Virus record (IMG/VR): IMGVR_UViG_3300048591_000147
Span: 62,001 to 126,000 of that record
Direction: 5' to 3' (one strand)
Length of the DNA stretch: 64,000 bases
Shown: piece after piece, positions 5,823-45,215 of the stretch
Numbering within the stretch: position 1 is the stretch's first letter
How the letters are laid out: each line of letters begins with the position of its first letter
Program-made: the position numbers and the translations under genes
Notes under the pieces: generated by a model
The model's input: the letters and a program-made list of their open reading frames with translations, nothing else
Database searches by the model: none
What the model was told of the DNA's origin: nothing

Positions 5823-6080
5823 ATGTCTGAAGAAACCAAAGTCCTCCTGTTAAAGGAACAGTTGCGGGAGATTTCTACACGGGTGCGTAATGATCTGACT
5901 GAAAAGTTCATTGCCAGCCTTGTTGGATATCTCAGGAACCGTGCCTTGGGTGGCTACACATTCTATGAAAGTGGTCCCATTCCTGATAATATTTGTAAAG
6001 AACAGTTGAAGGAATGGTTCAAGAGCGAAAAGATGATTATGTCTGTCAGGCATGATGACTCTATTGCTGTATACTGGTAA
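5823..6080 (+). CDS. hypothetical protein, tandem paralogue of 6115..6384
   Basis: RALGGY...IPDNICKEQL versus RAQAGY...VPTNICRDTL. Confidence 0.7.
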   Translation: MSEETKVLLLKEQLREISTRVRNDLTEKFIASLVGYLRNRALGGYTFYESGPIPDNICKEQLKEWFKSEKMIMSVRHDDSIAVYW

Positions 6081-6114
6081 TCCATTAAACCCCATCACGT
6101 AAAGGTATAATAAA

Positions 6115-6384
6115 ATGAAAGTTCTTTTGATTCGCTCCATGACTCAGGTCGGTCGCGCTGAAAGCACTACCAATTTCTATGCGGTCATCCTTGACCTGAT
6201 TGTCAAGCGTGCGCAGGCAGGCTATGGTGATCTGAAGTATGAAAAGGTTCCCACGAATATTTGCAGGGATACCCTTGTCTCGCAATTGCGAAATGATGGC
6301 TTCGCGGCTTCAGTCCGTCCCTATGCTGGTTGTCTGTCAGGATTGCGTGAATGGGACGTCCTGAACGTCGAATGGACAAACTGA
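6115..6384 (+). CDS. hypothetical protein, tandem paralogue of 5823..6080
   Basis: Shared motifs as listed for 5823..6080. Confidence 0.7.
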   Translation: MKVLLIRSMTQVGRAESTTNFYAVILDLIVKRAQAGYGDLKYEKVPTNICRDTLVSQLRNDGFAASVRPYAGCLSGLREWDVLNVEWTN

Positions 6385-6606
6385 AATGTTTGAGTTCCTT
6401 TGCTGGCTGTTTGTAGTACTCACGTTCATGTTTCTTGCAACTTCTGATGCAGAGCAGCATGCGCAAATCAGTTCAGCACGTATCGAAGTAGCACAGAAAC
6501 TATGTGCTGAACGTGGAGTGGAGTGGATCTCTCTACGAAAGGTTAAGTGCAAAGACAATTCCGTGTATACTAACTACTATGTCGAAACGAACTAGGATAT
6601 AATCAA

Positions 6607-7122
6607 ATGAGTATTGAAGCGCGTATTGCTGCTGTCAAACAGGCATTGGAAGACTATAAGAAATCCTTTGTGCCTCCTGCCATCACTTGGGATGAATTCT
6701 GGGAACCGTACAAGGCGATCATTCCCCAGATTGCAAGTGGAGAGAACTTCACTTATGAGAATGAATGTGATGTGGAATTCACTCCATTCTATGATGACGA
6801 TATCGAAAAGTGGCGGCTATTCGCATATTCATTTGATCTTGAACGTAATGATGACGATGGCTTGTGTATCTTAATCTATTACTTCGATGGTGATTGTAGC
6901 TGGGAACCATTCGAACAGATCACTGTCGAGGATGATTTTAGTGATGCGTATAATCGATTCTTCAACACTGACGATTACTTTATCGGTTGGACTGAATACC
7001 ATCTCTGGTGTGCTGAGAATGGTGGCGTTGATCCGTTGAAAGAATTCTTTCACAGTGCAACTACTGTCGAGAATCATCTTAGCGCCGCTGAAGATACTAT
7101 CAGAGTCCTTTCTAAGCCCTAA
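6607..7122 (+). CDS. acidic hypothetical protein
   Basis: 171-aa D/E-rich ORF with AGGA RBS. Confidence 0.75.
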   Translation: MSIEARIAAVKQALEDYKKSFVPPAITWDEFWEPYKAIIPQIASGENFTYENECDVEFTPFYDDDIEKWRLFAYSFDLERNDDDGLCILIYYFDGDCSWEPFEQITVEDDFSDAYNRFFNTDDYFIGWTEYHLWCAENGGVDPLKEFFHSATTVENHLSAAEDTIRVLSKP

Positions 7123-9848: not shown

Positions 9849-12212
9849 ATGCTTCTGAATACAAATCACTTTGATGGTGCCATCTCCAACATTGGAGTCC
9901 AGAAGAATTTTGGATTCGCCAGTAATGGAAAGGCTTTCCGAACCTTGTTCGATACCCTGTATCAGGATAAGATTGGTTCCATCGTCCGCGAAGTCGGTTG
10001 TAATGCGTATGATGCGCATGTGTTCGCTGGCAAGAGTGATATTCCTTTCGAAATCCATTTGCCGTCCATGATGGAACCTTTCTTCTCTGTGAAGGATTAT
10101 GGTATTGGCATGGATGAAGAAACGATTGGTGAAGTCTTCACCATTATGTTTGCTTCTACCAAAGATAAGACCAATATTGGTGTCGGTGGTTTCGGTCTGG
10201 GCAGTAAGACTCCATTTGCTTATACTGATAACTTCACTGTTATCTCTACCAAGGATGGACTGCGTTCCACCTATACGATGTATATCACCCAAGACGGTAC
10301 TCCGGGTTATGTCAAACTGTCCGATGACCATACGTCTGATTGCAATGGCGTGGAAATCGTCATGCCAGTTAATGACTTGAAGGATCGCCGTGCATTCTCT
10401 GAAGCTATTGTCAACCAGTTGCACTTCTTTCCCGTGCGTCCAGAAATCAAGGGTGGCGATTATGGTCTTACTTGGATGGTGGAACCCGCTGACAGTAAGG
10501 CTAGCTTGATCCATAATAATATCAAGTTCTTCAATGATAATAATCTGGACTCTCAGGACCGCCATGGTTGCTTTGCGGTTGTTGGTCCGGTTGGTTATGA
10601 ATTGAATTTCAGGATTTTGTCTGAACGTCTTCCGCACCATGAAAAACTGCTTAACTGGATGGATGACCAGAATATCCGCATTTTCTTTGATATTGGCGAA
10701 GTGTCGGTTACTCCGTCCCGTGAAACTCTGTCATATGATCCGATGACGATTGCCGCATTTGATAATCGGTTCAATGGTCTTATCGATGAACTGACCAAGC
10801 AATATCGCGAAGATTTTAATGCATGTGCCTCACTGGCTGAGAAAGCCATTTTCATGGCACAGAATAATTCGTGGTCGCGTAAACTGGTTGAGAAATCATT
10901 TTTTGATGTGTTCAATAAGAGCATTTTCAAGCGTGATTATAGTGGCGCATATAACATTATTAGTGGCGAGCATATTGAATCGTTGATCGGTCATACTGGC
11001 GGTTGGAGTAACGTAAATTTCACCGCACTACAAGGTTTGACGGTATCAAAGAAAGCGTCTCGCAATGGTAGTCGAGAATTCAAGTTTCTGCGAACTGATC
11101 TGAACTTTTGTATCGTTGACGTAACGCGATTGGCTGACCGTCGTGCGATAACTGCTGGCACTTGTATGAATGCCGCAGAAACGTATGCAGTGCACATTAA
11201 CCGCCAGAGTTTGGATGATGCCGCATTCAACGCACTGGTAGCCAAGACAAAGGACTTGTTGGAGTCCTACGGGTTCACGGTACACCTGTTGTCCAAGTAT
11301 GCGCCAGCGAAGGTAGATCGTGATTATGGTGTGATCAAGACGCATGGCTATCGTATTAATGAATATGCCACGTTTAATAATGTCACTACCGCATTGTCTG
11401 GTTCAAGTGCATGGACGAAACTGGTAGCCAAGTCTGAGATTGAACCGGGTTTCTATGTTCAGTCCCATTATGGCAATATCCAAGATGCTGACGCTGCGAA
11501 AATCTGCAAGCTGTTGCAGTTGAAGGCATTCAAGATGCTGCCAGCGGAAATGATGGACGTGGATGTTTTTGCAATGCCTATTAAGGCTTGTGAGAAATTG
11601 CAGGCGGATGATGGTTGGATCAATCTGGCCGAATACATTGATAAGGTGGCGGATGTTAATGTCGCTGAACTCTGCTATGACGTATGGGTAGCAGAAACCC
11701 TTAAAGGTGTTATTGGTAGTATGGATACTGCATCGAAGCACACCTTGCAGATTTTCGATAAGATCCTCCCATTGCGCGCATTGTTTTCGGAATTGCGTTC
11801 GATTATGTTGGATAATGAGATTATGCTGAGCGGTTATGATCCTGATACTCTGCGGGTTATGATTAGCCTGAAGCCTCATGATTATGTTATCGCTGGTAAT
11901 AATATCCGTAATATGATTCAGCGTTATGTGATTGAAGTATTCAAGAAGTTTCCGCTGTTGCCTACGCATGATATCTTCTGCTACTCATATATGAATGCGG
12001 ATGTGAACCTCATTGCAGAGTATATGGAATATATCACCTACTTCGCTAATACCTATCCAGAACGGATGAATCATACGCCATTTGATGTGAATTCCATTAT
12101 GAGTAAATTCCCCAAGCTACCAGTGGTGAAAGTGATTCCAGTAACGGATATCGAAGATGAATTAGTGGCAGAAGCATTAGAAGAAATCGAAGAAGAAGTT
12201 GTTGACAGGTAA
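9849..12212 (+). CDS. rIIA: rIIA-like protein with N-terminal GHKL ATPase domain
   Basis: LYQDKIGSIVREVGCNAYDAH, DYGIGM and GGFGLGSKTPFAY motifs; 787 aa; directly upstream of rIIB. Confidence 0.9.
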   Translation: MLLNTNHFDGAISNIGVQKNFGFASNGKAFRTLFDTLYQDKIGSIVREVGCNAYDAHVFAGKSDIPFEIHLPSMMEPFFSVKDYGIGMDEETIGEVFTIMFASTKDKTNIGVGGFGLGSKTPFAYTDNFTVISTKDGLRSTYTMYITQDGTPGYVKLSDDHTSDCNGVEIVMPVNDLKDRRAFSEAIVNQLHFFPVRPEIKGGDYGLTWMVEPADSKASLIHNNIKFFNDNNLDSQDRHGCFAVVGPVGYELNFRILSERLPHHEKLLNWMDDQNIRIFFDIGEVSVTPSRETLSYDPMTIAAFDNRFNGLIDELTKQYREDFNACASLAEKAIFMAQNNSWSRKLVEKSFFDVFNKSIFKRDYSGAYNIISGEHIESLIGHTGGWSNVNFTALQGLTVSKKASRNGSREFKFLRTDLNFCIVDVTRLADRRAITAGTCMNAAETYAVHINRQSLDDAAFNALVAKTKDLLESYGFTVHLLSKYAPAKVDRDYGVIKTHGYRINEYATFNNVTTALSGSSAWTKLVAKSEIEPGFYVQSHYGNIQDADAAKICKLLQLKAFKMLPAEMMDVDVFAMPIKACEKLQADDGWINLAEYIDKVADVNVAELCYDVWVAETLKGVIGSMDTASKHTLQIFDKILPLRALFSELRSIMLDNEIMLSGYDPDTLRVMISLKPHDYVIAGNNIRNMIQRYVIEVFKKFPLLPTHDIFCYSYMNADVNLIAEYMEYITYFANTYPERMNHTPFDVNSIMSKFPKLPVVKVIPVTDIEDELVAEALEEIEEEVVDR

Positions 12213-12269
12213 GATCACTTGATGTACCATAGCTACACATTAAACAAAACCCCAGTCAGGAGAAACAAA

Positions 12270-13307
12270 ATGCCAGTTCCGTTTATTTTCACCCCTACCG
12301 CGATCACCGTCGTTGTCAATGGTCGCACGCAAGTTGTACCTGCAAGCTCGCATAACTTTGATGATCTCAAGGTAGCATTGCGTAAGAATGCAGATGAAGA
12401 TACGATCAAGAAGATTCTTAATATCAAAGCGTATATTGCACAGTTGTCTGAAGGTCGTGCAGATATCGTTGATGGTCGCCTGTACTTTGATGGTGCACCA
12501 TTGGCTGGCGTGCTTGCTGAACGTGTGCAGCAGATGTTCGCTGAAGGTCTGGGAGTTCTCCCGCTGTTGCGCTTCCTGAATCGTGTCCAGCTTAATCCGC
12601 GCAAGGATATTGCGGTAGAATTGTACGAATTCTTGGAATCGGGTAACCTTCCTATTACGGAAGATGGTTTCATCCTTGCATACAAGATGGTGCGCCCGAA
12701 TTTCTTTGACGTCCACAGTGGCACCATGGATAATAGTCCGGGCAAGGTTGTCAGTCTGCCGTCTTATGAGGCTGTTGACGCCAATCGTTATAATGATTGC
12801 TCGGTCGGTCTTCACTTCTGTTCGCTGGCGTATATCGAAGCTGGTCTGGCACGATTCGTTGAACCGGGTAACCGTCTGGTACAGCTTCTGATCGATCCCG
12901 CTGATATTGTTGCAATCCCAACGGATTACAACCGCTCCAAGGGTCGTGCATGGAAGTACACTGTAATCCGCGAACTGGATTGGAATGATCGAATCAAGGC
13001 AAACTTTGCATCGAATGCTCATCTCAATGGTGAAGATGAACCAGAGCTTGACGAGGATGAAGAGATTGAAGATGTAGAGCTTGACGAAATCGAAGATTCT
13101 GATGATAATGATTCTCCAGTAGAGAACAAGGCGCCAGCAGGATCGAAGCTTGATGAAGATGATGTACGCGAAATCCTGAAGCTGTTGGATGATGGTACAA
13201 GCACTCTGACCGCGATTGGTAAGCTGTACGATATCAGTCCACGTCAGGTAGCCCGAATCCGCGATGGTGAAGCTTGGGGTTGGGTTTCGGATGCCTACTA
13301 CAGCTAA
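12270..13307 (+). CDS. rIIB: rIIB-like protein with C-terminal HTH
   Basis: LPITEDGFILAYKMVR, CSVGLHFCS, IDPADIVAIPTDYN.SKGRAWKY; AGGAG RBS at 12258. Confidence 0.9.
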   Translation: MPVPFIFTPTAITVVVNGRTQVVPASSHNFDDLKVALRKNADEDTIKKILNIKAYIAQLSEGRADIVDGRLYFDGAPLAGVLAERVQQMFAEGLGVLPLLRFLNRVQLNPRKDIAVELYEFLESGNLPITEDGFILAYKMVRPNFFDVHSGTMDNSPGKVVSLPSYEAVDANRYNDCSVGLHFCSLAYIEAGLARFVEPGNRLVQLLIDPADIVAIPTDYNRSKGRAWKYTVIRELDWNDRIKANFASNAHLNGEDEPELDEDEEIEDVELDEIEDSDDNDSPVENKAPAGSKLDEDDVREILKLLDDGTSTLTAIGKLYDISPRQVARIRDGEAWGWVSDAYYS

Positions 13308-13428: not shown

Positions 13429-13950
13429 ATGAAAAATTTTATTAAAGTTGTATGCGCAACAGTCTTAGCATTCGCATCATTCACAGCAGTAGCAAAACCA
13501 ATCTATTTAACACTTCCACCAGTCCCAGTTTCCACTACAACTGTAGTTCCAGCGGACGCGTCTGGATATTGGGTTTCCCACCAAGTTGCTGGTCTTAGTT
13601 TGGTTCTAGCCTCTGGTAAATATTCTGCTGGTAGTTATGGTCCAGCAACCTGTGGTAAGGTCGTAAAGGCTACTGTGTCAATTCCTCGCGTATCGCCTAC
13701 TAATGGATGGCAGTTTGCGGCAGGCCATGTATATGATCCAACTAATACTGGCATCCCTTATGGTCAAACATTTAACTTATTGACTAAAGGTGCATTAGCT
13801 GGTACGATGAGTGTTGTAGCGTATGATTCAACTAATAACTATTTAACAATTCAGTTAAATACACCTGCTGGTGGACCTTCAGGTCAGTTTGTGTTAAACC
13901 GTGATTCATTAGTACCATACACAGCATTGATCGTTCCGAATTGTCCATAA
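13429..13950 (+). CDS. secreted or periplasmic beta-rich protein
   Basis: Signal peptide MKNFIKVVCATVLAFASFTAVA; GGAG RBS. Confidence 0.7.
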   Translation: MKNFIKVVCATVLAFASFTAVAKPIYLTLPPVPVSTTTVVPADASGYWVSHQVAGLSLVLASGKYSAGSYGPATCGKVVKATVSIPRVSPTNGWQFAAGHVYDPTNTGIPYGQTFNLLTKGALAGTMSVVAYDSTNNYLTIQLNTPAGGPSGQFVLNRDSLVPYTALIVPNCP

Positions 13951-14053: not shown

Positions 14054-14245
14054 ATGAGCAACCTGAACAATCTTCAGGCACGTTTGGTTACACTCTCCAA
14101 GCAACTGTCGGCTGCAAGGGCTGATGCGGAAGTCAACGAAGAGTTGATGTGGGACTTGGAAGATGAGATTGCAGATATCGAAGATGAGATTGAAGGTATC
14201 ATGCAAGATGATTATAATGACAAGCACGCAGCGCAGTGGCGCTAA
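14054..14245 (+). CDS. small acidic coiled-coil protein
   Basis: Own sigma70 promoter (TTGACG-N17-TATAGT) and AGGA RBS. Confidence 0.7.
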   Translation: MSNLNNLQARLVTLSKQLSAARADAEVNEELMWDLEDEIADIEDEIEGIMQDDYNDKHAAQWR

Positions 14246-14265
14246 TTATAATTACATTTACATGT

Positions 14266-14343
14266 GGCTCCGTAGCTTAGCGATCTAAAGCGGGTAATTC
14301 TAAACTACTGTCATCCTCGGTTTGAATCCGAGCGGAGCCACCA
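14266..14343 (+). tRNA. tRNA with CUA anticodon (amber-suppressor-like)
   Basis: GGCTCCG/CGGAGCC acceptor, ACCA end, loop TT-CTA-AA, T arm CTCGG-TTTGAAT-CCGAG. Confidence 0.75.
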
Positions 14344-14918
14344 ATATTTCTTCCACAATATGTTGAAGTTTGGCTATGACAATTTGGACATAACCATCTT
14401 AAATTTTCAATGCGATGATCATTCCGAATGCCATTTATGTGATCTAAATGTAATATTAATGGGCGCCCATTCCATATTAGTTCATTTGATAATATACATG
14501 AACTAATTGAACAATGATATGGAAGTAACGAATCTCTATGAATTCTACGTTTAACAACTGGCGTGTCTACAGTTGAATTTGCTTGAAATATATAAGAGTT
14601 TGGGTAATCCTTTTGCCCTGTGCATAATCGCTTTCTATCTATTGTTAGTTTTCCAGATTTAATCGCCAATGTTATAGCAGTAGGAGATATGCCAGTGGCC
14701 AATTTTAATTCTGTGATACACAGTCCTGTATCATATATTTTTTGAACTTCCACCCAATCATAATTTTTAGTTTTTACGCCGTGCTTCTTATTTAAAGAAT
14801 TTTGCCTAGCATGATAAGCTACGGTAGATTTTGCCACCCCAAGTTTATTGCAAATTTCACTATAAGTTTTTCCATCATTAATCATATTAATAATATCATC
14901 TTTTTTATTTGTCTTCAT
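14277..14918 (-). CDS. HTH + HNH homing endonuclease
   Basis: N-terminal HTH; LHLDHINGIRNDHRIENLRWLCPNCHSQT; GATAAATA upstream at 14949-14956. Confidence 0.85.
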   Translation of the reverse strand: MKTNKKDDIINMINDGKTYSEICNKLGVAKSTVAYHARQNSLNKKHGVKTKNYDWVEVQKIYDTGLCITELKLATGISPTAITLAIKSGKLTIDRKRLCTGQKDYPNSYIFQANSTVDTPVVKRRIHRDSLLPYHCSISSCILSNELIWNGRPLILHLDHINGIRNDHRIENLRWLCPNCHSQTSTYCGRNIGGSARIQTEDDSSLELPALDR

Positions 14919-15041
14919 TTCGAACCCTTTATAAGTAATAGTCTATACTATTTATCAAAGATTCGATAAAAAGCAGATAAATCTTGACAAACAAGTTCTG
15001 ATAGGCTAGGTTTTCTGGTAATCCTGACTAGGGGCGCCATA

Positions 15042-15647
15042 ATGTTTCGTTTTCTTGTTAAAGTTCCTAATAAAGTAGGCATTGCCTTTTCGGGTGGTGT
15101 CGATTCACTAGCTGTTGCACACTTCCTGAAGAAAGGTAAAAAGGATATTACTTTATACCATTTCAATCATGGTTGTGAGTATTCCAAAGACATCGAAGAC
15201 AAGTGTAGGGAGTCAGCAGAAAAGCTATCTCTTCCCATCATTGTGAGTGGTTATGATGGTGCTCGCCTGAAGGGCCAATCTCTTGAGGATGCATGGCGTA
15301 GAGCTAGGTATCGTTTCCTTAGATCGTTCGATGAGAAAATTATCACTTGTCATCATCTTGACGATGCTGTAGAGACTTGGGTTTGGTCCAGCATGCATGG
15401 TGAAGGTAAGTTGATCCCTGTAGAATCTGGCAACATTGTTAGACCATTTCTCACCACTGAAAAGTCAACTTTTGAGAACTACAGTAAAAACAATGACTTA
15501 GAAGTTGTCGAAGATGAAATGAACAAAGATCAGCACTTGATTCGAAACTACATGCGTGTTAATCTAATGCATCACTTGTATCACATCAATCCCGGTCTTC
15601 GAACAGTTATCAGGAAAAAGTATAATGAACTTCAAAGACACAGTTAA
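15042..15647 (+). CDS. tilS: tRNA(Ile)-lysidine synthetase-like PP-loop ATPase (catalytic domain only)
   Basis: AFSGGVDS, HFNHG, R.ARY.FL, TCHHLDDAVET, RPFL and RNY.R motifs. Confidence 0.85.
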   Translation: MFRFLVKVPNKVGIAFSGGVDSLAVAHFLKKGKKDITLYHFNHGCEYSKDIEDKCRESAEKLSLPIIVSGYDGARLKGQSLEDAWRRARYRFLRSFDEKIITCHHLDDAVETWVWSSMHGEGKLIPVESGNIVRPFLTTEKSTFENYSKNNDLEVVEDEMNKDQHLIRNYMRVNLMHHLYHINPGLRTVIRKKYNELQRHS

Positions 15648-16311
15648 GCACATGATGTTTAACTACCCCTCAATTTTTCCTACTCCGTTGGCTGCATGCC
15701 GTCAACTATTCTTCACTGTTGGCAATGGGATGGAATGGGTAAAGGGTGAATTGGTTACCACCATGCGCTATCCGGGCGAGAAGAATTCCGCCACGATGTT
15801 GTATGATGATATTGATGACAATATCAAACACTATAAAGAAATGGATTATATTGTTTCAAAGCGGTACATTCTGGAAGAAGAATTGCGCAGGCTCAATCGC
15901 AAGTTCATTGAAGAACATATCGATGAATTCATTAGCGATAACTGCATGATCAATCTAACTGACCGAAGTAGCACCTGTAATGGTCATTATGAATTGAATA
16001 TTGGTGATTATGCAAAAGTCCTTTGTGTTCCCAATAATGTTAAAAAGGATTGGGGGCAAGCCGCGTTAGATGCTATCGATTGGGCATTTGTCAACCTCAA
16101 TATGGTCTATGGTGTTGCTAACCAAAAGCCGTATGATGCGCATTGGCCAGACAGTGCAAAGCAGACCCATAGCAATCTCATGAAGGCAAGAGACAAGATT
16201 AGAAATATCATGAAACTCCCCACTCAGCAGCAGTTGGACGATATTGCTGATAAAATCATCACCGAAATTTTAAACGAAGAGAAACTGGAGAAAGAAAATG
16301 CTCAAGCTTGA
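15625..16311 (+). CDS. hypothetical protein
   Basis: 228-aa ORF coupled to tilS. Confidence 0.75.
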   Translation: MNFKDTVKHMMFNYPSIFPTPLAACRQLFFTVGNGMEWVKGELVTTMRYPGEKNSATMLYDDIDDNIKHYKEMDYIVSKRYILEEELRRLNRKFIEEHIDEFISDNCMINLTDRSSTCNGHYELNIGDYAKVLCVPNNVKKDWGQAALDAIDWAFVNLNMVYGVANQKPYDAHWPDSAKQTHSNLMKARDKIRNIMKLPTQQQLDDIADKIITEILNEEKLEKENAQA

Positions 16312-21556: not shown

Positions 21557-21632
21557 GGCCCGGAAGCTTATTCGGTCAAGCATCGAACTCATAATTCGGA
21601 GAAAGTGGGTTCGAATCCCACACGGGCCACCA
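21557..21632 (+). tRNA. tRNA-CAU (Ile2-like or Met)
   Basis: Cloverleaf with loop CT-CAT-AA; GGCCC acceptor resembles enterobacterial tRNA-Ile2; CCA encoded. Confidence 0.85.
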
Positions 21633-25000: not shown

Positions 25001-25076
25001 GCCCTCTTAGCTCAGAGAAATAGAGCACTCCCGTTCTAGGGAGGGGTCGGTGGTTTAAGTCCATCAGAGGGCGCCA
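25001..25076 (+). tRNA. atypical tRNA with a 6-nt anticodon loop (GTTCTA)
   Basis: Perfect GCCCTCT/AGAGGGC acceptor, D and T arms, CCA; CTCCC/GGGAG encloses only 6 nt. Confidence 0.6.
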
Positions 25077-26089: not shown

Positions 26090-26178
26090 GCCGGGGTAGC
26101 CAAGTGGTTGACGGCAATTGATTTGTAATCAATCGGGCTTTACGCCCCTCGCAGGTTCGAATCCTGTCCCCGGCTCCA
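26090..26178 (+). tRNA. tRNA-Tyr(GUA), second copy
   Basis: ATTGA-TTTGTAA-TCAAT, long variable arm, CCA. Confidence 0.9.
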
Positions 26179-28049: not shown

Positions 28050-28138
28050 GGTAGTCTGGCCGTCTGGCTGAAGGCACCCGACTGATAATCGGTGAGTCTA
28101 ACGACTCTAGGTAGGTTCGATCCCTACGGCTACCACCA
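28050..28138 (+). tRNA. tRNA with GAU (Ile) anticodon and long variable arm
   Basis: Loop CT-GAT-AA; variable hairpin GAGTC-TAAC-GACTC; CCA. Confidence 0.8.
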
Positions 28139-38662: not shown

Positions 38663-38770
38663 GGGAGCGTGGCCAAGTGGTAAGGCAGCAGACTTTTTAA
38701 GTATTTTTACAGTCATTAAGAATACTTAGAAATCTGTTTATCGTGGGTTCGAATCCCACCGCTCCCACCA
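38663..38770 (+). tRNA. tRNA (probably Lys-UUU) with a 33-nt insertion in the anticodon loop
   Basis: Perfect acceptor, D and T arms and CCA; 40 nt between the GCAGA and TCTGT anticodon stem strands. Confidence 0.75.
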
Positions 38771-44460: not shown

Positions 44461-44782
44461 ACAAATTCAGGAACCATTCAGGTTAGTAATGATAGAATGG
44501 TTTCAACAAATGAGGAAGAGATACCGTAACTTAGATTGTCACCCTCCGGTTGGGTTAACGATGGTTCGATTCCATCTGACAATGTAAGCGCCCACGGGTA
44601 TATGTCTAACGAGGCTCGGACATACCATTTCAGTGCGATGTGACCGTTACACAAAGGTAAGAGAGTTTGGTGAGATTACACCATTCAGGTATGTCTAGTC
44701 ATGCCCCATCGCCCAATTACACTAGGTAAGCCATGGCCATGGTGAAGCCTACACGTAGAGTCATGATCTATGTGGTGTTGCG

Positions 44783-44855
44783 TCCAGATTCTTCTAGTGG
44801 TTAGGAAAGGCCCCCGATTGCGGGCTTAACACAGGTTCGAATCCTGTATCTGGAC
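44783..44855 (+). tRNA. tRNA-like element with 8-nt anticodon loop and no encoded CCA
   Basis: TCCAGAT/ATCTGGA acceptor, AGTGGTT D loop, ACAGG-TTCGAAT-CCTGT T arm. Confidence 0.55.
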
Positions 44856-45215
44856 TAAGTTCTTCAATCAAATCAAGAGGTTATCGTGAAAATTTTTCTG
44901 CAAATATTCTCTGCCGTACTACTGATAATTGCGATAACCGCAGTGAACAAAGCGTTACAGTCGCCTATGAATGGTATGCCTTTTGTAGCTGGTGCATGTG
45001 TCACAGCATTCATCGAAGTATTCCGCGCCTATTGCAGGAAGGATTAACATGAACGTCATCCGCTCAAACCTTGAAACATATTTTTACATGGCTCTGCAAA
45101 CTTCGCGGGAAGTTGATCAACGGATTGGCGAAAACTTCAAGTCCATTCAGACAGCAGCAATCGAAGATACACTGAAAGCCGTCCAAGATGGCGAACAACT
45201 GTGGATTGTAGAATA

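What the first reader, a model, noticed from the sequence alone, without database searches (positions are those of the whole stretch)
14266..14343. Amber-anticodon (CUA) tRNA in a genome that appears to use the standard code
Seen: complete cloverleaf with encoded CCA and loop UU-CUA-AA, but with an A31-C39 mismatch, no GG in the D loop and T loop UUUGAAU. Long genes here contain no in-frame TAG and several short genes end in TAG. Established: CUA tRNAs accompany TAG recoding in some large phages. Inference: a conditional readthrough device, an early stage or relic of recoding, or a decoy. Late HNH transcription would produce antisense RNA against it.
Basis: partly seen in the sequence, partly recalled or inferred. 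Interest (0 to 1): 0.65.

Follow-up and report, generated by a model that had tools for sequence, protein, structure and literature searches.

The report
Phage amber-suppressor tRNA, standard-code genome
A giant bacteriophage that reads the ordinary genetic code carries a well-formed, evolutionarily conserved tRNA whose anticodon matches the UAG stop codon; this puzzle was already reported for related jumbo phages, and no target gene can be found.

Summary
Window 14266-14343 (+) is a complete tRNA with anticodon CUA and an encoded CCA. ARAGORN calls it and it scores 48.5 bits on the Rfam tRNA model.

- G19 to A and C56 to U together keep the 19-56 tertiary pair.
- The A31·C39 mismatch recurs in 6 of 26 relatives.

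The tRNA belongs to a phage-specific family. I collected 26 distinct members, mostly from jumbo-phage contigs. Their stems covary strongly. The search pattern hit only 2 of about 185,000 cellular species genomes. CUA tRNAs of Xanthomonas phage XacN1 and Stenotrophomonas phage RAS14 score nearly as high on the family model.

The 315-kb genome and a complete 307-kb relative both use the standard code. No 10-kb segment gains meaningful coding density if TAG is read as sense. No extension after a TAG stop is conserved, and there is no excess of tandem stops. I found no release factor above the family threshold and no phage synthetase in the families searched.

The HNH gene is a recent selfish insertion. 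It is absent from all three relatives that share the local gene order, so antisense control is incidental.

Best reading: a working UAG-decoding tRNA charged by host enzymes, with no dedicated target gene. Expression and charging could not be tested. Verdict: a new member of a known, unexplained kind.

The parts
14266..14343 (+). tRNA with anticodon CUA (anticodon at 14300-14302), A73, encoded CCA. Member of the phage 'type A' CUA family defined here.
   Evidence: ARAGORN. Rfam tRNA 48.5 bits. Family model R1 79 bits. Family covariation.
14277..14918 (-). HNH homing-endonuclease ORF of 213 aa (N-terminal HTH, HNH motif near residues 156-184). Its last 22 codons are the antisense of the tRNA. 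Lineage-specific insertion between the tRNA and the TilS-N gene.
   Evidence: PHROG 10822, E 8e-31, and weak Pfam HNH hits. Absent at this place in L003/L036, L037 and L044. Four paralogues, all within 650 nt of tRNA genes.
15042..15647 (+). Stand-alone N-terminal (PP-loop) domain of tRNA(Ile)-lysidine synthetase, 201 aa, with no C-terminal tRNA-binding domains. In relatives it starts 2-8 nt after the CUA tRNA.
   Evidence: TIGR02432 lysidine_TilS_N 110.3 bits (cut-off 93.6). PF01171. Synteny.
14054..14245 (+). 63-aa ORF of unknown function. Ends 20 nt before the tRNA and is conserved upstream of the tRNA in all relatives.
13429..13950 (+). 173-aa ORF of unknown function, part of the conserved block rIIB / p173 / p63 / tRNA / TilS-N.
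14190..14218 (+). Sigma-70-like promoter match (TTGAAG, 17 nt, TATAAT) 47 nt upstream of the tRNA. A consensus match only.
   Evidence: The number of such sites in the region is not above the shuffle expectation.
21557..21632 (+). tRNA(CAU) with a tRNA-Ile2-like acceptor stem (GGCCC..., C4:G69 and C5:G68). The likely ordinary substrate of the phage TilS-N.
   Evidence: The E. coli TilS identity elements are quoted in PMC12514573.
16789..17913 (+). T4 Rnl1-type RNA ligase (tRNA repair). Neighbourhood context only.
   Evidence: PF09511 and PF20819. It lies directly after rIIB in XacN1 and RAS14.
9849..13307 (+). rIIA (9849-12212) and rIIB (12219-13307), which open the block that holds the tRNA.

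Best explanation
This is a functional elongator-type tRNA of a phage-specific family, and its job is to pair with UAG.

Proposed mechanism (all steps inferred except where noted):
1. It is transcribed together with the plus-strand block rIIA / rIIB / p173 / p63 / tRNA. In relatives the block runs straight on into TilS-N.
2. It is cut out of that transcript. The CCA end is already encoded (shown).
3. Host synthetases charge it, because the phage encodes no synthetase in the three families searched. Lysyl- or glutaminyl-tRNA synthetase is most likely, since both key on U35.
4. It competes with release factor 1 at UAG codons.

The genome uses the standard code and has no gene that needs UAG decoding. 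The effect would therefore be a general, low-level readthrough of the few TAG-terminated genes, usually to a back-up stop about 9 codons on, and of any amber mutations. It is not a programmed extension of one protein.

The HNH gene beside it is a later selfish insertion.
For: Shown:
- Cloverleaf with an intact tertiary set: U8, A14, A21, G15/C48, G18/U55, A19/U56, U54/A58, G53/C61.
- Orthologues in the same gene order in three further phage lineages, with compensatory changes in the acceptor stem (2-71, 6-67), at 27-43, and at 19-56.
- Family of 26 distinct CUA tRNAs: 96.9% of cells paired, 17 of 21 pairs with changes on both sides, 0 of 500 shuffles as good. Sliding the partner drops pairing to 28-48%.
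- 19/56 is G/C in 23 members and A/U in 3, with no mixed cases.
- Loop YUCUAAA throughout. CUAAA was fixed by the search pattern; Y32 and U33 were not.
- Phage-specific: 34 metagenome hits and 7 IMG/VR hits (contigs of 65-435 kb), against 2 hits in about 185,000 cellular species genomes.
- Some phages carry 2-3 different CUA tRNAs in tandem, which argues for real decoding demand.
- XacN1 and RAS14 carry CUA tRNAs that score 73-76 bits on the family model.
- No phage Glu/Gln, Lys/Asp/Asn or Trp/Tyr synthetase and no release factor above the family threshold.

Background:
- E. coli LysRS and GlnRS both accept CUA suppressor tRNAs, and the 31-39 pair shifts the balance between them (PMC1483225).
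Against: - No expression, charging or readthrough data. The only public runs that hold the sequence are wastewater assemblies kept as contigs, which show presence only.
- The genome shows no adaptation to a suppressor. Extension lengths after TAG equal those after TAA and TGA. Tandem stops are not enriched (Fisher p = 0.40).
- The discriminator base varies in the family (A in 20, G in 6), and the direct orthologue in L003 has G73 and no encoded CCA. Uniform aminoacylation identity is therefore doubtful.
- The anticodon stem is imperfect here (A31·C39) and carries two U·U pairs in L003 and L044.
- A general benefit of weak suppression is hard to argue from selection.
Confidence: 0.6

Rival explanations
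1. A transitional state on the way to, or back from, reassigning TAG to an amino acid. In this route a rare TAG stop comes first, then a suppressor tRNA is acquired, and later in-frame TAGs appear in late genes.
For: TAG is the rarest stop: 8.7% of ORFs, 3.9% of conserved genes, and none among ORFs of 400 aa or more. This route, including standard-code relatives that have acquired a suppressor tRNA, is described in 10.1101/2021.08.26.457843. The T arm of a crAss-like phage CUA tRNA is nearly identical.
Against: The family persists in deeply diverged standard-code jumbo phages. XacN1 is described by its authors as having only ordinary TAG stops. Neither complete genome has a single 10-kb segment that gains more than 0.10 in coverage with TAG read as sense. 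GC is 39%, not extremely low. No release factor 2 or other code-change genes were found.
Confidence: 0.12
2. Programmed readthrough of one or a few specific phage genes, producing a C-terminally extended isoform.
For: This is the classic use of stop-codon suppression in viruses. 46 ORFs end in TAG.
Against: Only 7 of 46 extensions reach 30 codons or more, the same share as for TAA and TGA. The two with positive coding score are simply the next gene in the same frame. Among orthologous pairs with G001, TAG is rarely retained and no extension is conserved. The one apparent case is a short conserved intergenic stretch, and the next gene starts in a different frame in this genome. The XacN1 authors found the same negative result.
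Confidence: 0.1
3. A role outside decoding: a decoy or antidote for host tRNA-targeting defence nucleases, or a processing signal for the neighbouring mRNA.
For: It lies 2.4 kb upstream of an Rnl1-type tRNA repair ligase. The scaffold is shared with phage tRNA-Lys(UUU), which scores 60-76 bits on R1. In relatives, the Shine-Dalgarno-like GGAG(G) of TilS-N lies inside the acceptor 3' strand.
Against: In the 26 collected members the anticodon and the A37 A38 context match. This is partly because the search pattern fixed CUAAA. Full EF-Tu/ribosome-type architecture and the CCA end are kept, and a decoy would not need all of these. Rnl1 sits next to rIIB in XacN1 and RAS14 without the tRNA, so that adjacency is historical.
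Confidence: 0.08
4. A substrate of the adjacent phage TilS N-domain enzyme. C34 would be converted to lysidine, changing the codon read from UAG to UAA and/or the charging identity.
For: The tRNA and TilS-N are 2-8 nt apart in three lineages. More distant TilS-N homologues (36-40% identical) are each followed within about 40 nt by a tRNA(CAU), an enzyme-plus-substrate cassette. The enzyme lacks the C-terminal domains that cellular TilS uses to pick its tRNA. The D-arm scaffold is shared with many phage tRNA(CAU) genes.
Against: XacN1 and RAS14 have the tRNA but no TilS-N. G002 has TilS-N but no such tRNA in the 60% of its genome that is held. The four adjacent cases are one related clade, so they count as one event. 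No TilS-N lies near the other family members. The phage has a tRNA-Ile2-like CAU tRNA as an ordinary substrate. A lysidine-U-A anticodon would read TAA, which is the main stop here (53% of ORFs).
Confidence: 0.05
5. A decaying, functionless tRNA pseudogene.
For: A31·C39 mismatch, a 6-nt variable loop, an HNH ORF running over it, and an orthologue in L003 without CCA and with U·U pairs.
Against: Compensated tertiary and helical changes, 95% identity with L037 including a U43-to-C change that improves pairing, strong family covariation, and Rfam scores of 48.5 and 56.2 bits for the window and G001 copies.
Confidence: 0.05

Closest known systems
CUA 'suppressor' tRNA genes of Xanthomonas jumbo phage XacN1 (Yoshikawa et al. 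2018, PMC5852040) and of Stenotrophomonas phage RAS14
   Same: A jumbo phage with the standard code, a large tRNA set and a CUA tRNA. No readthrough target was found in silico. The tRNAs score 73-76 bits on the family model built here and have the same loop, CUCUAAA, and A73 or G73 plus CCA. These phages are distant relatives of the window phage (rIIA 36-37% identical, same rIIA/rIIB/RNA ligase order).
   Different: In those phages the tRNAs lie in the big tRNA cluster (in XacN1 within the terminal repeats, two in tandem, next to a tmRNA gene). Here a single copy lies between rIIB and the RNA ligase, next to a TilS N-domain gene. The D stem in XacN1 is GCUC/GAGC rather than GCUU/AAGC.
Suppressor tRNA(CUA) of TAG-recoded phages (crAss-like, Lak, other code-15 phages)
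   Same: A phage-encoded CUA tRNA charged by host enzymes. The T arm of the cr272_1 tRNA is nearly identical to the window's, including the UUUGAAU loop.
   Different: Those genomes have in-frame TAG in conserved late genes and sometimes encode RF2. This genome and G001 have neither.
Laboratory and natural amber suppressors of E. coli and T4 (supE, su+7 from tRNA-Trp, T4 psu)
   Same: A CUA anticodon with A37 A38. Competition with RF1. Charging driven by U35, giving Gln or Lys (otherwise my own knowledge).
   Different: Those are single-mutation derivatives of a resident sense tRNA. This one is a separate gene family, conserved over many phages, with no sense-anticodon twin in the same genome.
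T5 tRNA-Ile1(GAU) and other phage tRNAs that share the GCUU-AGNGNNCUA-AAGC D arm
   Same: Identical 17-nt D arm and the same A19/U56 pairing in T5 tRNA-Ile1. The scaffold is common in phage tRNA(CAU), Ile, Lys, Asp and Trp.
   Different: Those have sense anticodons. The scaffold does not reveal which amino acid the CUA form accepts.

Membership tests
Canonical elongator tRNA (Rfam RF00005) | Cloverleaf scoring above the family's gathering threshold | tested here: met
   48.5 bits against 29. ARAGORN call.
Canonical elongator tRNA (Rfam RF00005) | 7-nt anticodon loop with U33, and the D-loop/T-loop tertiary pairs 18-55 and 19-56 | tested here: met
   Loop UUCUAAA. G18/U55 is present. 19-56 is A-U instead of G-C, and the two positions covary perfectly in the family (23 G/C, 3 A/U).
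Canonical elongator tRNA (Rfam RF00005) | The mature RNA is made and aminoacylated | not testable with these tools
   Only contig-level wastewater assemblies hold the sequence.
Phage 'type A' CUA tRNA family (defined here, model R1) | G1-C72, D arm GCUU-AGNGNNCUA-AAGC, loop YUCUAAA, short variable loop ending AUC, purine 73 | tested here: met
   79 bits on R1; members score 75.8-97.1. Deviations: a 6-nt variable loop instead of 4, and A19/U56. Sense tRNAs on the same scaffold score up to 85 bits, so the anticodon is part of the definition.
Suppressor tRNA of a TAG-recoded (code 15) phage | In-frame TAG codons in conserved genes, and a clear gain in coding density when TAG is read as sense | tested here: not met
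   Cover 0.922 against 0.930. Largest gain in any 10-kb window is 0.08, which is about what TGA-as-sense gives (0.07).
Suppressor tRNA of a TAG-recoded (code 15) phage | Accompanying code-change genes (RF2, a dedicated synthetase) | tested here: not met
   Only a sub-threshold RF-1-like fragment without GGQ. No class Ic, IIb or Ib synthetase.
tRNA-Pyl (the label ARAGORN gives any CUA tRNA) | Short D loop, 6-bp anticodon stem, 3-nt variable loop, atypical T loop (features from my own knowledge) | tested here: not met
   9-nt D loop, 5-bp anticodon stem, 6-nt variable loop. The label is only a default for CUA.
tRNA-Ile2, the TilS substrate | Anticodon CAU, with C34 converted to lysidine. In E. 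coli, C4:G69 and C5:G68 are identity elements. | tested here: not met
   The anticodon is CUA and the 4-69 pair is U-A. The nearby tRNA(CAU) at 21557 does meet these features. Modification itself is not testable here.

The most novel reading that the evidence does not exclude
The CUA tRNA and the domain-minimal TilS gene that directly follows it in relatives form an enzyme-substrate pair. Lysidine at C34 would retarget the tRNA from UAG to UAA or switch its charging identity. That would be a phage-controlled, modification-dependent stop-codon suppressor.
Probability: 0.05. Interest if true: 0.85.

Novelty: new member of a known kind. Interest (0 to 1): 0.42.

Why it matters
Natural stop-codon-reading tRNAs in phages that do not recode any stop have been noted several times, for example in XacN1, Stenotrophomonas phage Summit and Klebsiella phage phiKp24, and never explained.

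This case adds three things:
- The CUA tRNA is one of a conserved, structurally constrained and almost exclusively phage-borne family, so it is under selection rather than an accident.
- Two complete genomes carrying it show no trace of TAG recoding or of adaptation to suppression.
- A compact, well-behaved natural amber suppressor with encoded CCA is easy to test in a reporter strain, and could be useful as a suppressor scaffold.

If its role were found, it would explain a recurrent feature of jumbo-phage tRNA sets. Candidate roles are relief of termination at UAG, tolerance of amber mutations, anti-defence, or a link to lysidine synthesis.

Tried and rejected
- **Close phage relatives by DNA.** Megablast of the 3-kb region against GenBank phages found nothing. 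A blastn search with the tRNA gave only partial hits: the T5 tRNA-Ile D arm and a crAss-like CUA tRNA.
- **Origin inside the genome.** Pairwise comparison with the genome's other 33 tRNAs found no paralogue from which it could derive by one anticodon change.
- **Reads.** The sequence occurs only in wastewater assemblies labelled RNA-Seq but probably DNA, and kept as contigs. Laying 5,401 bases confirmed the tRNA-HNH junction with zero mismatches in two runs. It showed no HNH-less joint and says nothing about expression.
- **TAG readthrough candidates.** The candidates at genome 65969 and 126480 are adjacent genes that happen to lie in the same frame. The conserved "RS.." after the TAG at genome 108059 is a short intergenic stretch.
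- **Tandem stops.** Not enriched after TAG.
- **tRNA remnant upstream of TilS-N.** A suspected 3' remnant at 14995-15039 scores only 1.3 bits, so I dropped it.
- **Ancestry from model scores.** Lys, Ile, CAU and Trp tRNAs on the same scaffold all score 60-85 bits, so the ancestral amino-acid identity cannot be read off.
- **p228 as split TilS C-terminal domains.** The ORF at 15625-16311 has no TilS_C hit and is not conserved in relatives.
- **Caveat on the family's host genomes.** Loci of 5-15 kb around other family members look standard-code. Recoded phages keep their early regions in standard code, so only the complete genomes G000 and G001 and the published XacN1 analysis count for this point.
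- **Alternative codes.** TAG-as-sense was used only as a counting control in scripts. No sequence was translated or searched under another code.
- **Tools not needed.** Complex prediction, structure prediction and the large protein searches.

Full report
**1. The object**

ARAGORN finds 19 tRNA genes in the window. One is a 78-nt gene at 14266-14343 (+) with anticodon CTA. The sequence folds as follows:
- acceptor GGCUCCG/CGGAGCC
- D stem GCUU/AAGC with D loop AGCGAUCUA
- anticodon stem GGUAA/CUACU with loop UUCUAAA
- a 6-nt variable loop
- T stem CUCGG/CCGAG with loop UUUGAAU
- A73 and an encoded CCA

A local Rfam scan scores it at 48.5 bits on the tRNA model (E 1.2e-9, gathering score 29) and marks only the 31-39 pair as non-standard. 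The whole-window scan with Rfam's fast filters missed it.

**2. The genome and its code**

The window is bases 62001-126000 of a single 314,956-bp contig with direct terminal repeats, rated 100% complete. GC is 39% and ARAGORN finds 34 tRNA genes covering all 20 amino acids. It is a jumbo phage. By rIIA, the nearest named phages are Stenotrophomonas phages CM1 and RAS14 and Xanthomonas phages Xoo-sp13 and XacN1, at only 36-37% identity. The sequence occurs in wastewater metagenomes.

Evidence that the code is standard:
- A greedy set of code-11 ORFs covers 91.5% of the genome.
- TAG ends 46 of 529 ORFs. That is 12% of ORFs of 50-100 aa, 4.3% of those of 200-400 aa, and none of the 36 ORFs of 400 aa or more.
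- TAG ends 3.9% of the 258 genes that have a reciprocal best hit in the relative G001.
- Reading TAG as sense raises stop-to-stop coverage only from 0.922 to 0.930. The largest gain in any 10-kb window is 0.08, about the same as the meaningless TGA-as-sense control at 0.07.

The complete relative G001 (306,759 bp, which I fetched in full) behaves the same way. Neither genome recodes TAG, in late genes or anywhere else.

**3. No readthrough target**

- After a TAG stop, the next in-frame stop lies a median of 9 codons downstream, the same as after TAA (9) and TGA (7.5). Seven of 46 extensions reach 30 codons, a share no higher than for the other stops.
- The two extensions with a coding-like codon score are simply the next gene lying in the same frame.
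- Only 5 TAG-ending genes have orthologues in G001 whose alignment reaches both C-termini, and 2 of these keep TAG. None of the 20 orthologous pairs in which either partner ends in TAG shows a conserved extension. The single look-alike is a short conserved intergenic stretch, after which the next gene starts in a different frame in this genome.
- Immediately adjacent back-up stops are not enriched after TAG (9 of 86 against 71 of 934, p = 0.40).
- The genome encodes no release factor above the family threshold and no Glu/Gln, Lys/Asp/Asn or Trp/Tyr synthetase.

**4. The tRNA is conserved and constrained**

The neighbouring 201-aa protein led to relatives. Three further lineages share one gene order:
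- L003/L036/G001
- L037, on a 173-kb contig
- L044

The order is rIIB, a 173-aa ORF where the contig reaches that far, a 63-aa ORF, then a CUA tRNA, then this protein starting 2-8 nt after the tRNA.

The L037 copy is 95% identical to the window's. It keeps A31·C39, and its 27-43 pair is G-C where the window has G·U. The G001 copy is about 70% identical. It has compensatory changes at acceptor pairs 2-71 and 6-67 and scores 56.2 bits on Rfam.

A pattern taken from the D arm and anticodon loop found 34 metagenome stretches and 7 IMG/VR contigs (65-435 kb, four of them over 300 kb). It found only 2 stretches in one genome each of about 185,000 bacterial and archaeal species.

ARAGORN found a complete CUA tRNA at most of the metagenome sites. 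That gave 26 distinct sequences of one family, counting the window and L003, which I call type A. After alignment to a covariance model:
- 96.9% of stem cells are standard pairs.
- 17 of 21 pairs show changes on both sides; the four invariant pairs are the D stem fixed by the search pattern.
- No shuffle out of 500 reaches the observed values.
- Sliding the 3' partners drops pairing to 28-48%.

This is purifying selection on a cloverleaf.

The search pattern fixed the letters CUAAA, so the invariance of the anticodon within this set is partly by construction. Y32 and U33 were not fixed and are also invariant.

**5. The supposed defects**

- **D and T loops.** The D loop has G18 but A at position 19, and the T loop has U at position 56. 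In the family, 19/56 is G/C in 23 members and A/U in 3 (window, L037, and independently L021), with no mixed cases. T5 tRNA-Ile1 has the identical D arm with U56. Phage tRNA(CAU) genes on the same scaffold appear to show a third combination, U19/A56, judged by eye from the sequences. The tertiary pair is therefore maintained, not lost.
- **31-39 mismatch.** A31·C39 occurs in 6 of 26 members. Two more have other mismatches at this one position, while the other four anticodon-stem pairs are almost always paired. It is a tolerated, possibly selected, property of the family. In E. coli the 31-39 pair tunes whether LysRS or GlnRS accepts a CUA suppressor (PMC1483225).
- **What is particular to the window and L037.** Only the 6-nt variable loop, where the family has 4 nt.

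**6. Relation to known cases**

The family model scores the two tandem CUA tRNAs in each terminal repeat of XacN1 at 72.9 bits. It scores the one in RAS14 at 76 bits. The XacN1 paper reports these suppressor genes. It states that in-silico readthrough of the 18 amber stops found nothing and that no target could be identified (PMC5852040). Similar unexplained suppressor tRNAs are reported for Stenotrophomonas phage Summit and Klebsiella phage phiKp24.

In recoded gut phages, suppressor tRNAs accompany in-frame stops. Standard-code relatives carrying a suppressor have been proposed as precursors of recoding (10.1101/2021.08.26.457843). Here the state is shared by phages as far apart as 36% rIIA identity, which argues for stable coexistence with the standard code rather than a transition.

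**7. Which amino acid**

This cannot be decided here. The D-arm scaffold alone, searched without any anticodon constraint in IMG/VR, belongs mostly to these anticodons:

| Anticodon | Count |
|---|---|
| CAU | 53 |
| GAU (Ile) | 20 |
| UUU (Lys) | 10 |

Asp, Trp, His and Ala appear a few times each. Sense tRNAs on this scaffold score 60-85 bits on the family model. The highest is a tRNA-Trp whose loop, CUCCAAA, is one change from CUCUAAA.

The discriminator is A in 20 members and G in 6. With no phage synthetase in the families searched, host enzymes that key on U35 are the likely chargers. That points to LysRS (which favours A73) or GlnRS. This step is inference.

**8. The neighbours**

- **TilS-N.** The 201-aa protein is the N-terminal catalytic domain of tRNA(Ile)-lysidine synthetase (TIGR02432, 110.3 bits, above its cut-off). 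It lacks the C-terminal domains by which cellular enzymes recognise their tRNA. Homologues at 36-40% identity in eight other viral contigs are each followed within about 40 nt by a tRNA(CAU), an enzyme-with-substrate cassette.
- **The tempting link.** This makes the tight tRNA(CUA)/TilS-N adjacency interesting, and in relatives the GGAG(G) of the acceptor 3' strand sits at Shine-Dalgarno distance from the TilS-N start codon.
- **Why I rate it low.** XacN1 and RAS14 have the tRNA without TilS-N. G002 has TilS-N without the tRNA in the part of its genome that is held. No TilS-N lies near the other family members. The phage has its own tRNA-Ile2-like CAU tRNA at 21557, with C4:G69 and C5:G68. A lysidine-modified anticodon would read TAA, the commonest stop here. 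I keep this as the novel reading, at about 5%.
- **HNH.** The HNH ORF (14918-14277, minus strand) is present only in the window. Its last 22 codons are simply the antisense of the tRNA, and in L037 the only tblastn match to HNH is that antisense stretch. It has four paralogues in the genome. All five copies lie within 650 nt of a tRNA gene, while 6.9% of the genome does; random placement gives p of about 1e-5. It is a homing endonuclease that targets tRNA-gene neighbourhoods. Any antisense effect on the tRNA is a by-product in this one lineage.

**9. Verdict**

The tRNA is real, selected, and built to read UAG. The genome uses the standard code and offers no target for it. The most likely mechanism is general low-level amber suppression by a host-charged phage tRNA. 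Its benefit remains unknown, as in the published XacN1 case.

Expression, charging and readthrough are untested, because only contig-level metagenome data exist.

Noticed in passing
window 25001-25076 (+): tRNA-like gene (Rfam 43.8 bits) with a 6-nt anticodon loop GUUCUA, for which ARAGORN reports a two-base anticodon 'tc'. Its D arm resembles the phage's tRNA-Arg(UCU). It also has a D loop without GG and a T loop with U56. It could be a damaged Arg tRNA or an unusual decoder.
   Followed up: partly
window 38663-38767 (+): tRNA (Rfam 61.4 bits) with a 36-nt insertion in the anticodon loop, apparently an intron-containing tRNA(UUU). ARAGORN did not call it. An HNH paralogue lies about 390 nt downstream.
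   Followed up: partly
window 26090-26178, 28050-28138; genome 34337-34423: tRNA-Thr(UGU), tRNA-Ile(GAU) and tRNA-Lys(UUU) are 87-89 nt long with long variable arms. That is unusual for these amino acids.
   Followed up: no
window 15042-15647; loci L005-L012 around 6001-6700: Phage-encoded lysidine synthetase reduced to its N-terminal domain (201 aa). In a second clade of viral contigs the homologue is directly followed by a tRNA(CAU), a portable TilS plus tRNA-Ile2 cassette. Three of those contigs also carry a tmRNA gene about 1.3-2 kb upstream.
   Followed up: partly
genome 20305-20547, 49060-49497, 76280-76918, 88396-88629, 101160-101288: All five HNH paralogues lie 0-649 nt from a tRNA gene (random placement p about 1e-5). 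This suggests a homing-endonuclease family that targets tRNA genes.
   Followed up: yes
L037 4970-5050 (-), L044 368-450, L003 5920-6003: In relatives the TilS-N start codon lies 2-8 nt after the tRNA, so its Shine-Dalgarno-like GGAG(G) is the 3' strand of the tRNA acceptor stem. tRNA folding or processing and TilS-N translation may therefore be mutually exclusive.
   Followed up: partly
L003 8272-8379; L037 2600-2695: A second copy of the last 32-36 codons of TilS-N lies 1.7-2.3 kb downstream of the gene, flanking an inserted ORF (557 aa in L003). It looks like the footprint of another mobile insertion.
   Followed up: no
genome 234786-235469 (+) (locus L197 786-1469): A 227-aa ORF ending in TAG has a sub-threshold match (E about 1e-4) to the RF-1 domain of release factors at residues 131-189. 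The match includes HLPTG but lacks the GGQ motif. No reciprocal-best orthologue in G001.
   Followed up: partly
L051 2655-3075 (XacN1); L018 1469-1800; L026 5250-5588; L032 6410-6808: Phage tmRNA genes lie within 0.6-3.6 kb of CUA tRNAs in several phages that carry the family. Some of these phages hold two or three different CUA tRNAs in tandem, and the second type looks tRNA-Trp-like.
   Followed up: no
window 44782-44856 (+): ARAGORN calls a tRNA-Asn with anticodon ATT. It is not found by Rfam at the gathering score and has no U33 in the obvious loop register. Doubtful gene.
   Followed up: no
window 14368-14411: In the wastewater assemblies, a stretch of about 40 nt inside the HNH gene has 10- to 50-fold higher summed contig depth, with many contigs diverging on both sides. 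It is a short segment shared with other elements in the sample.
   Followed up: no
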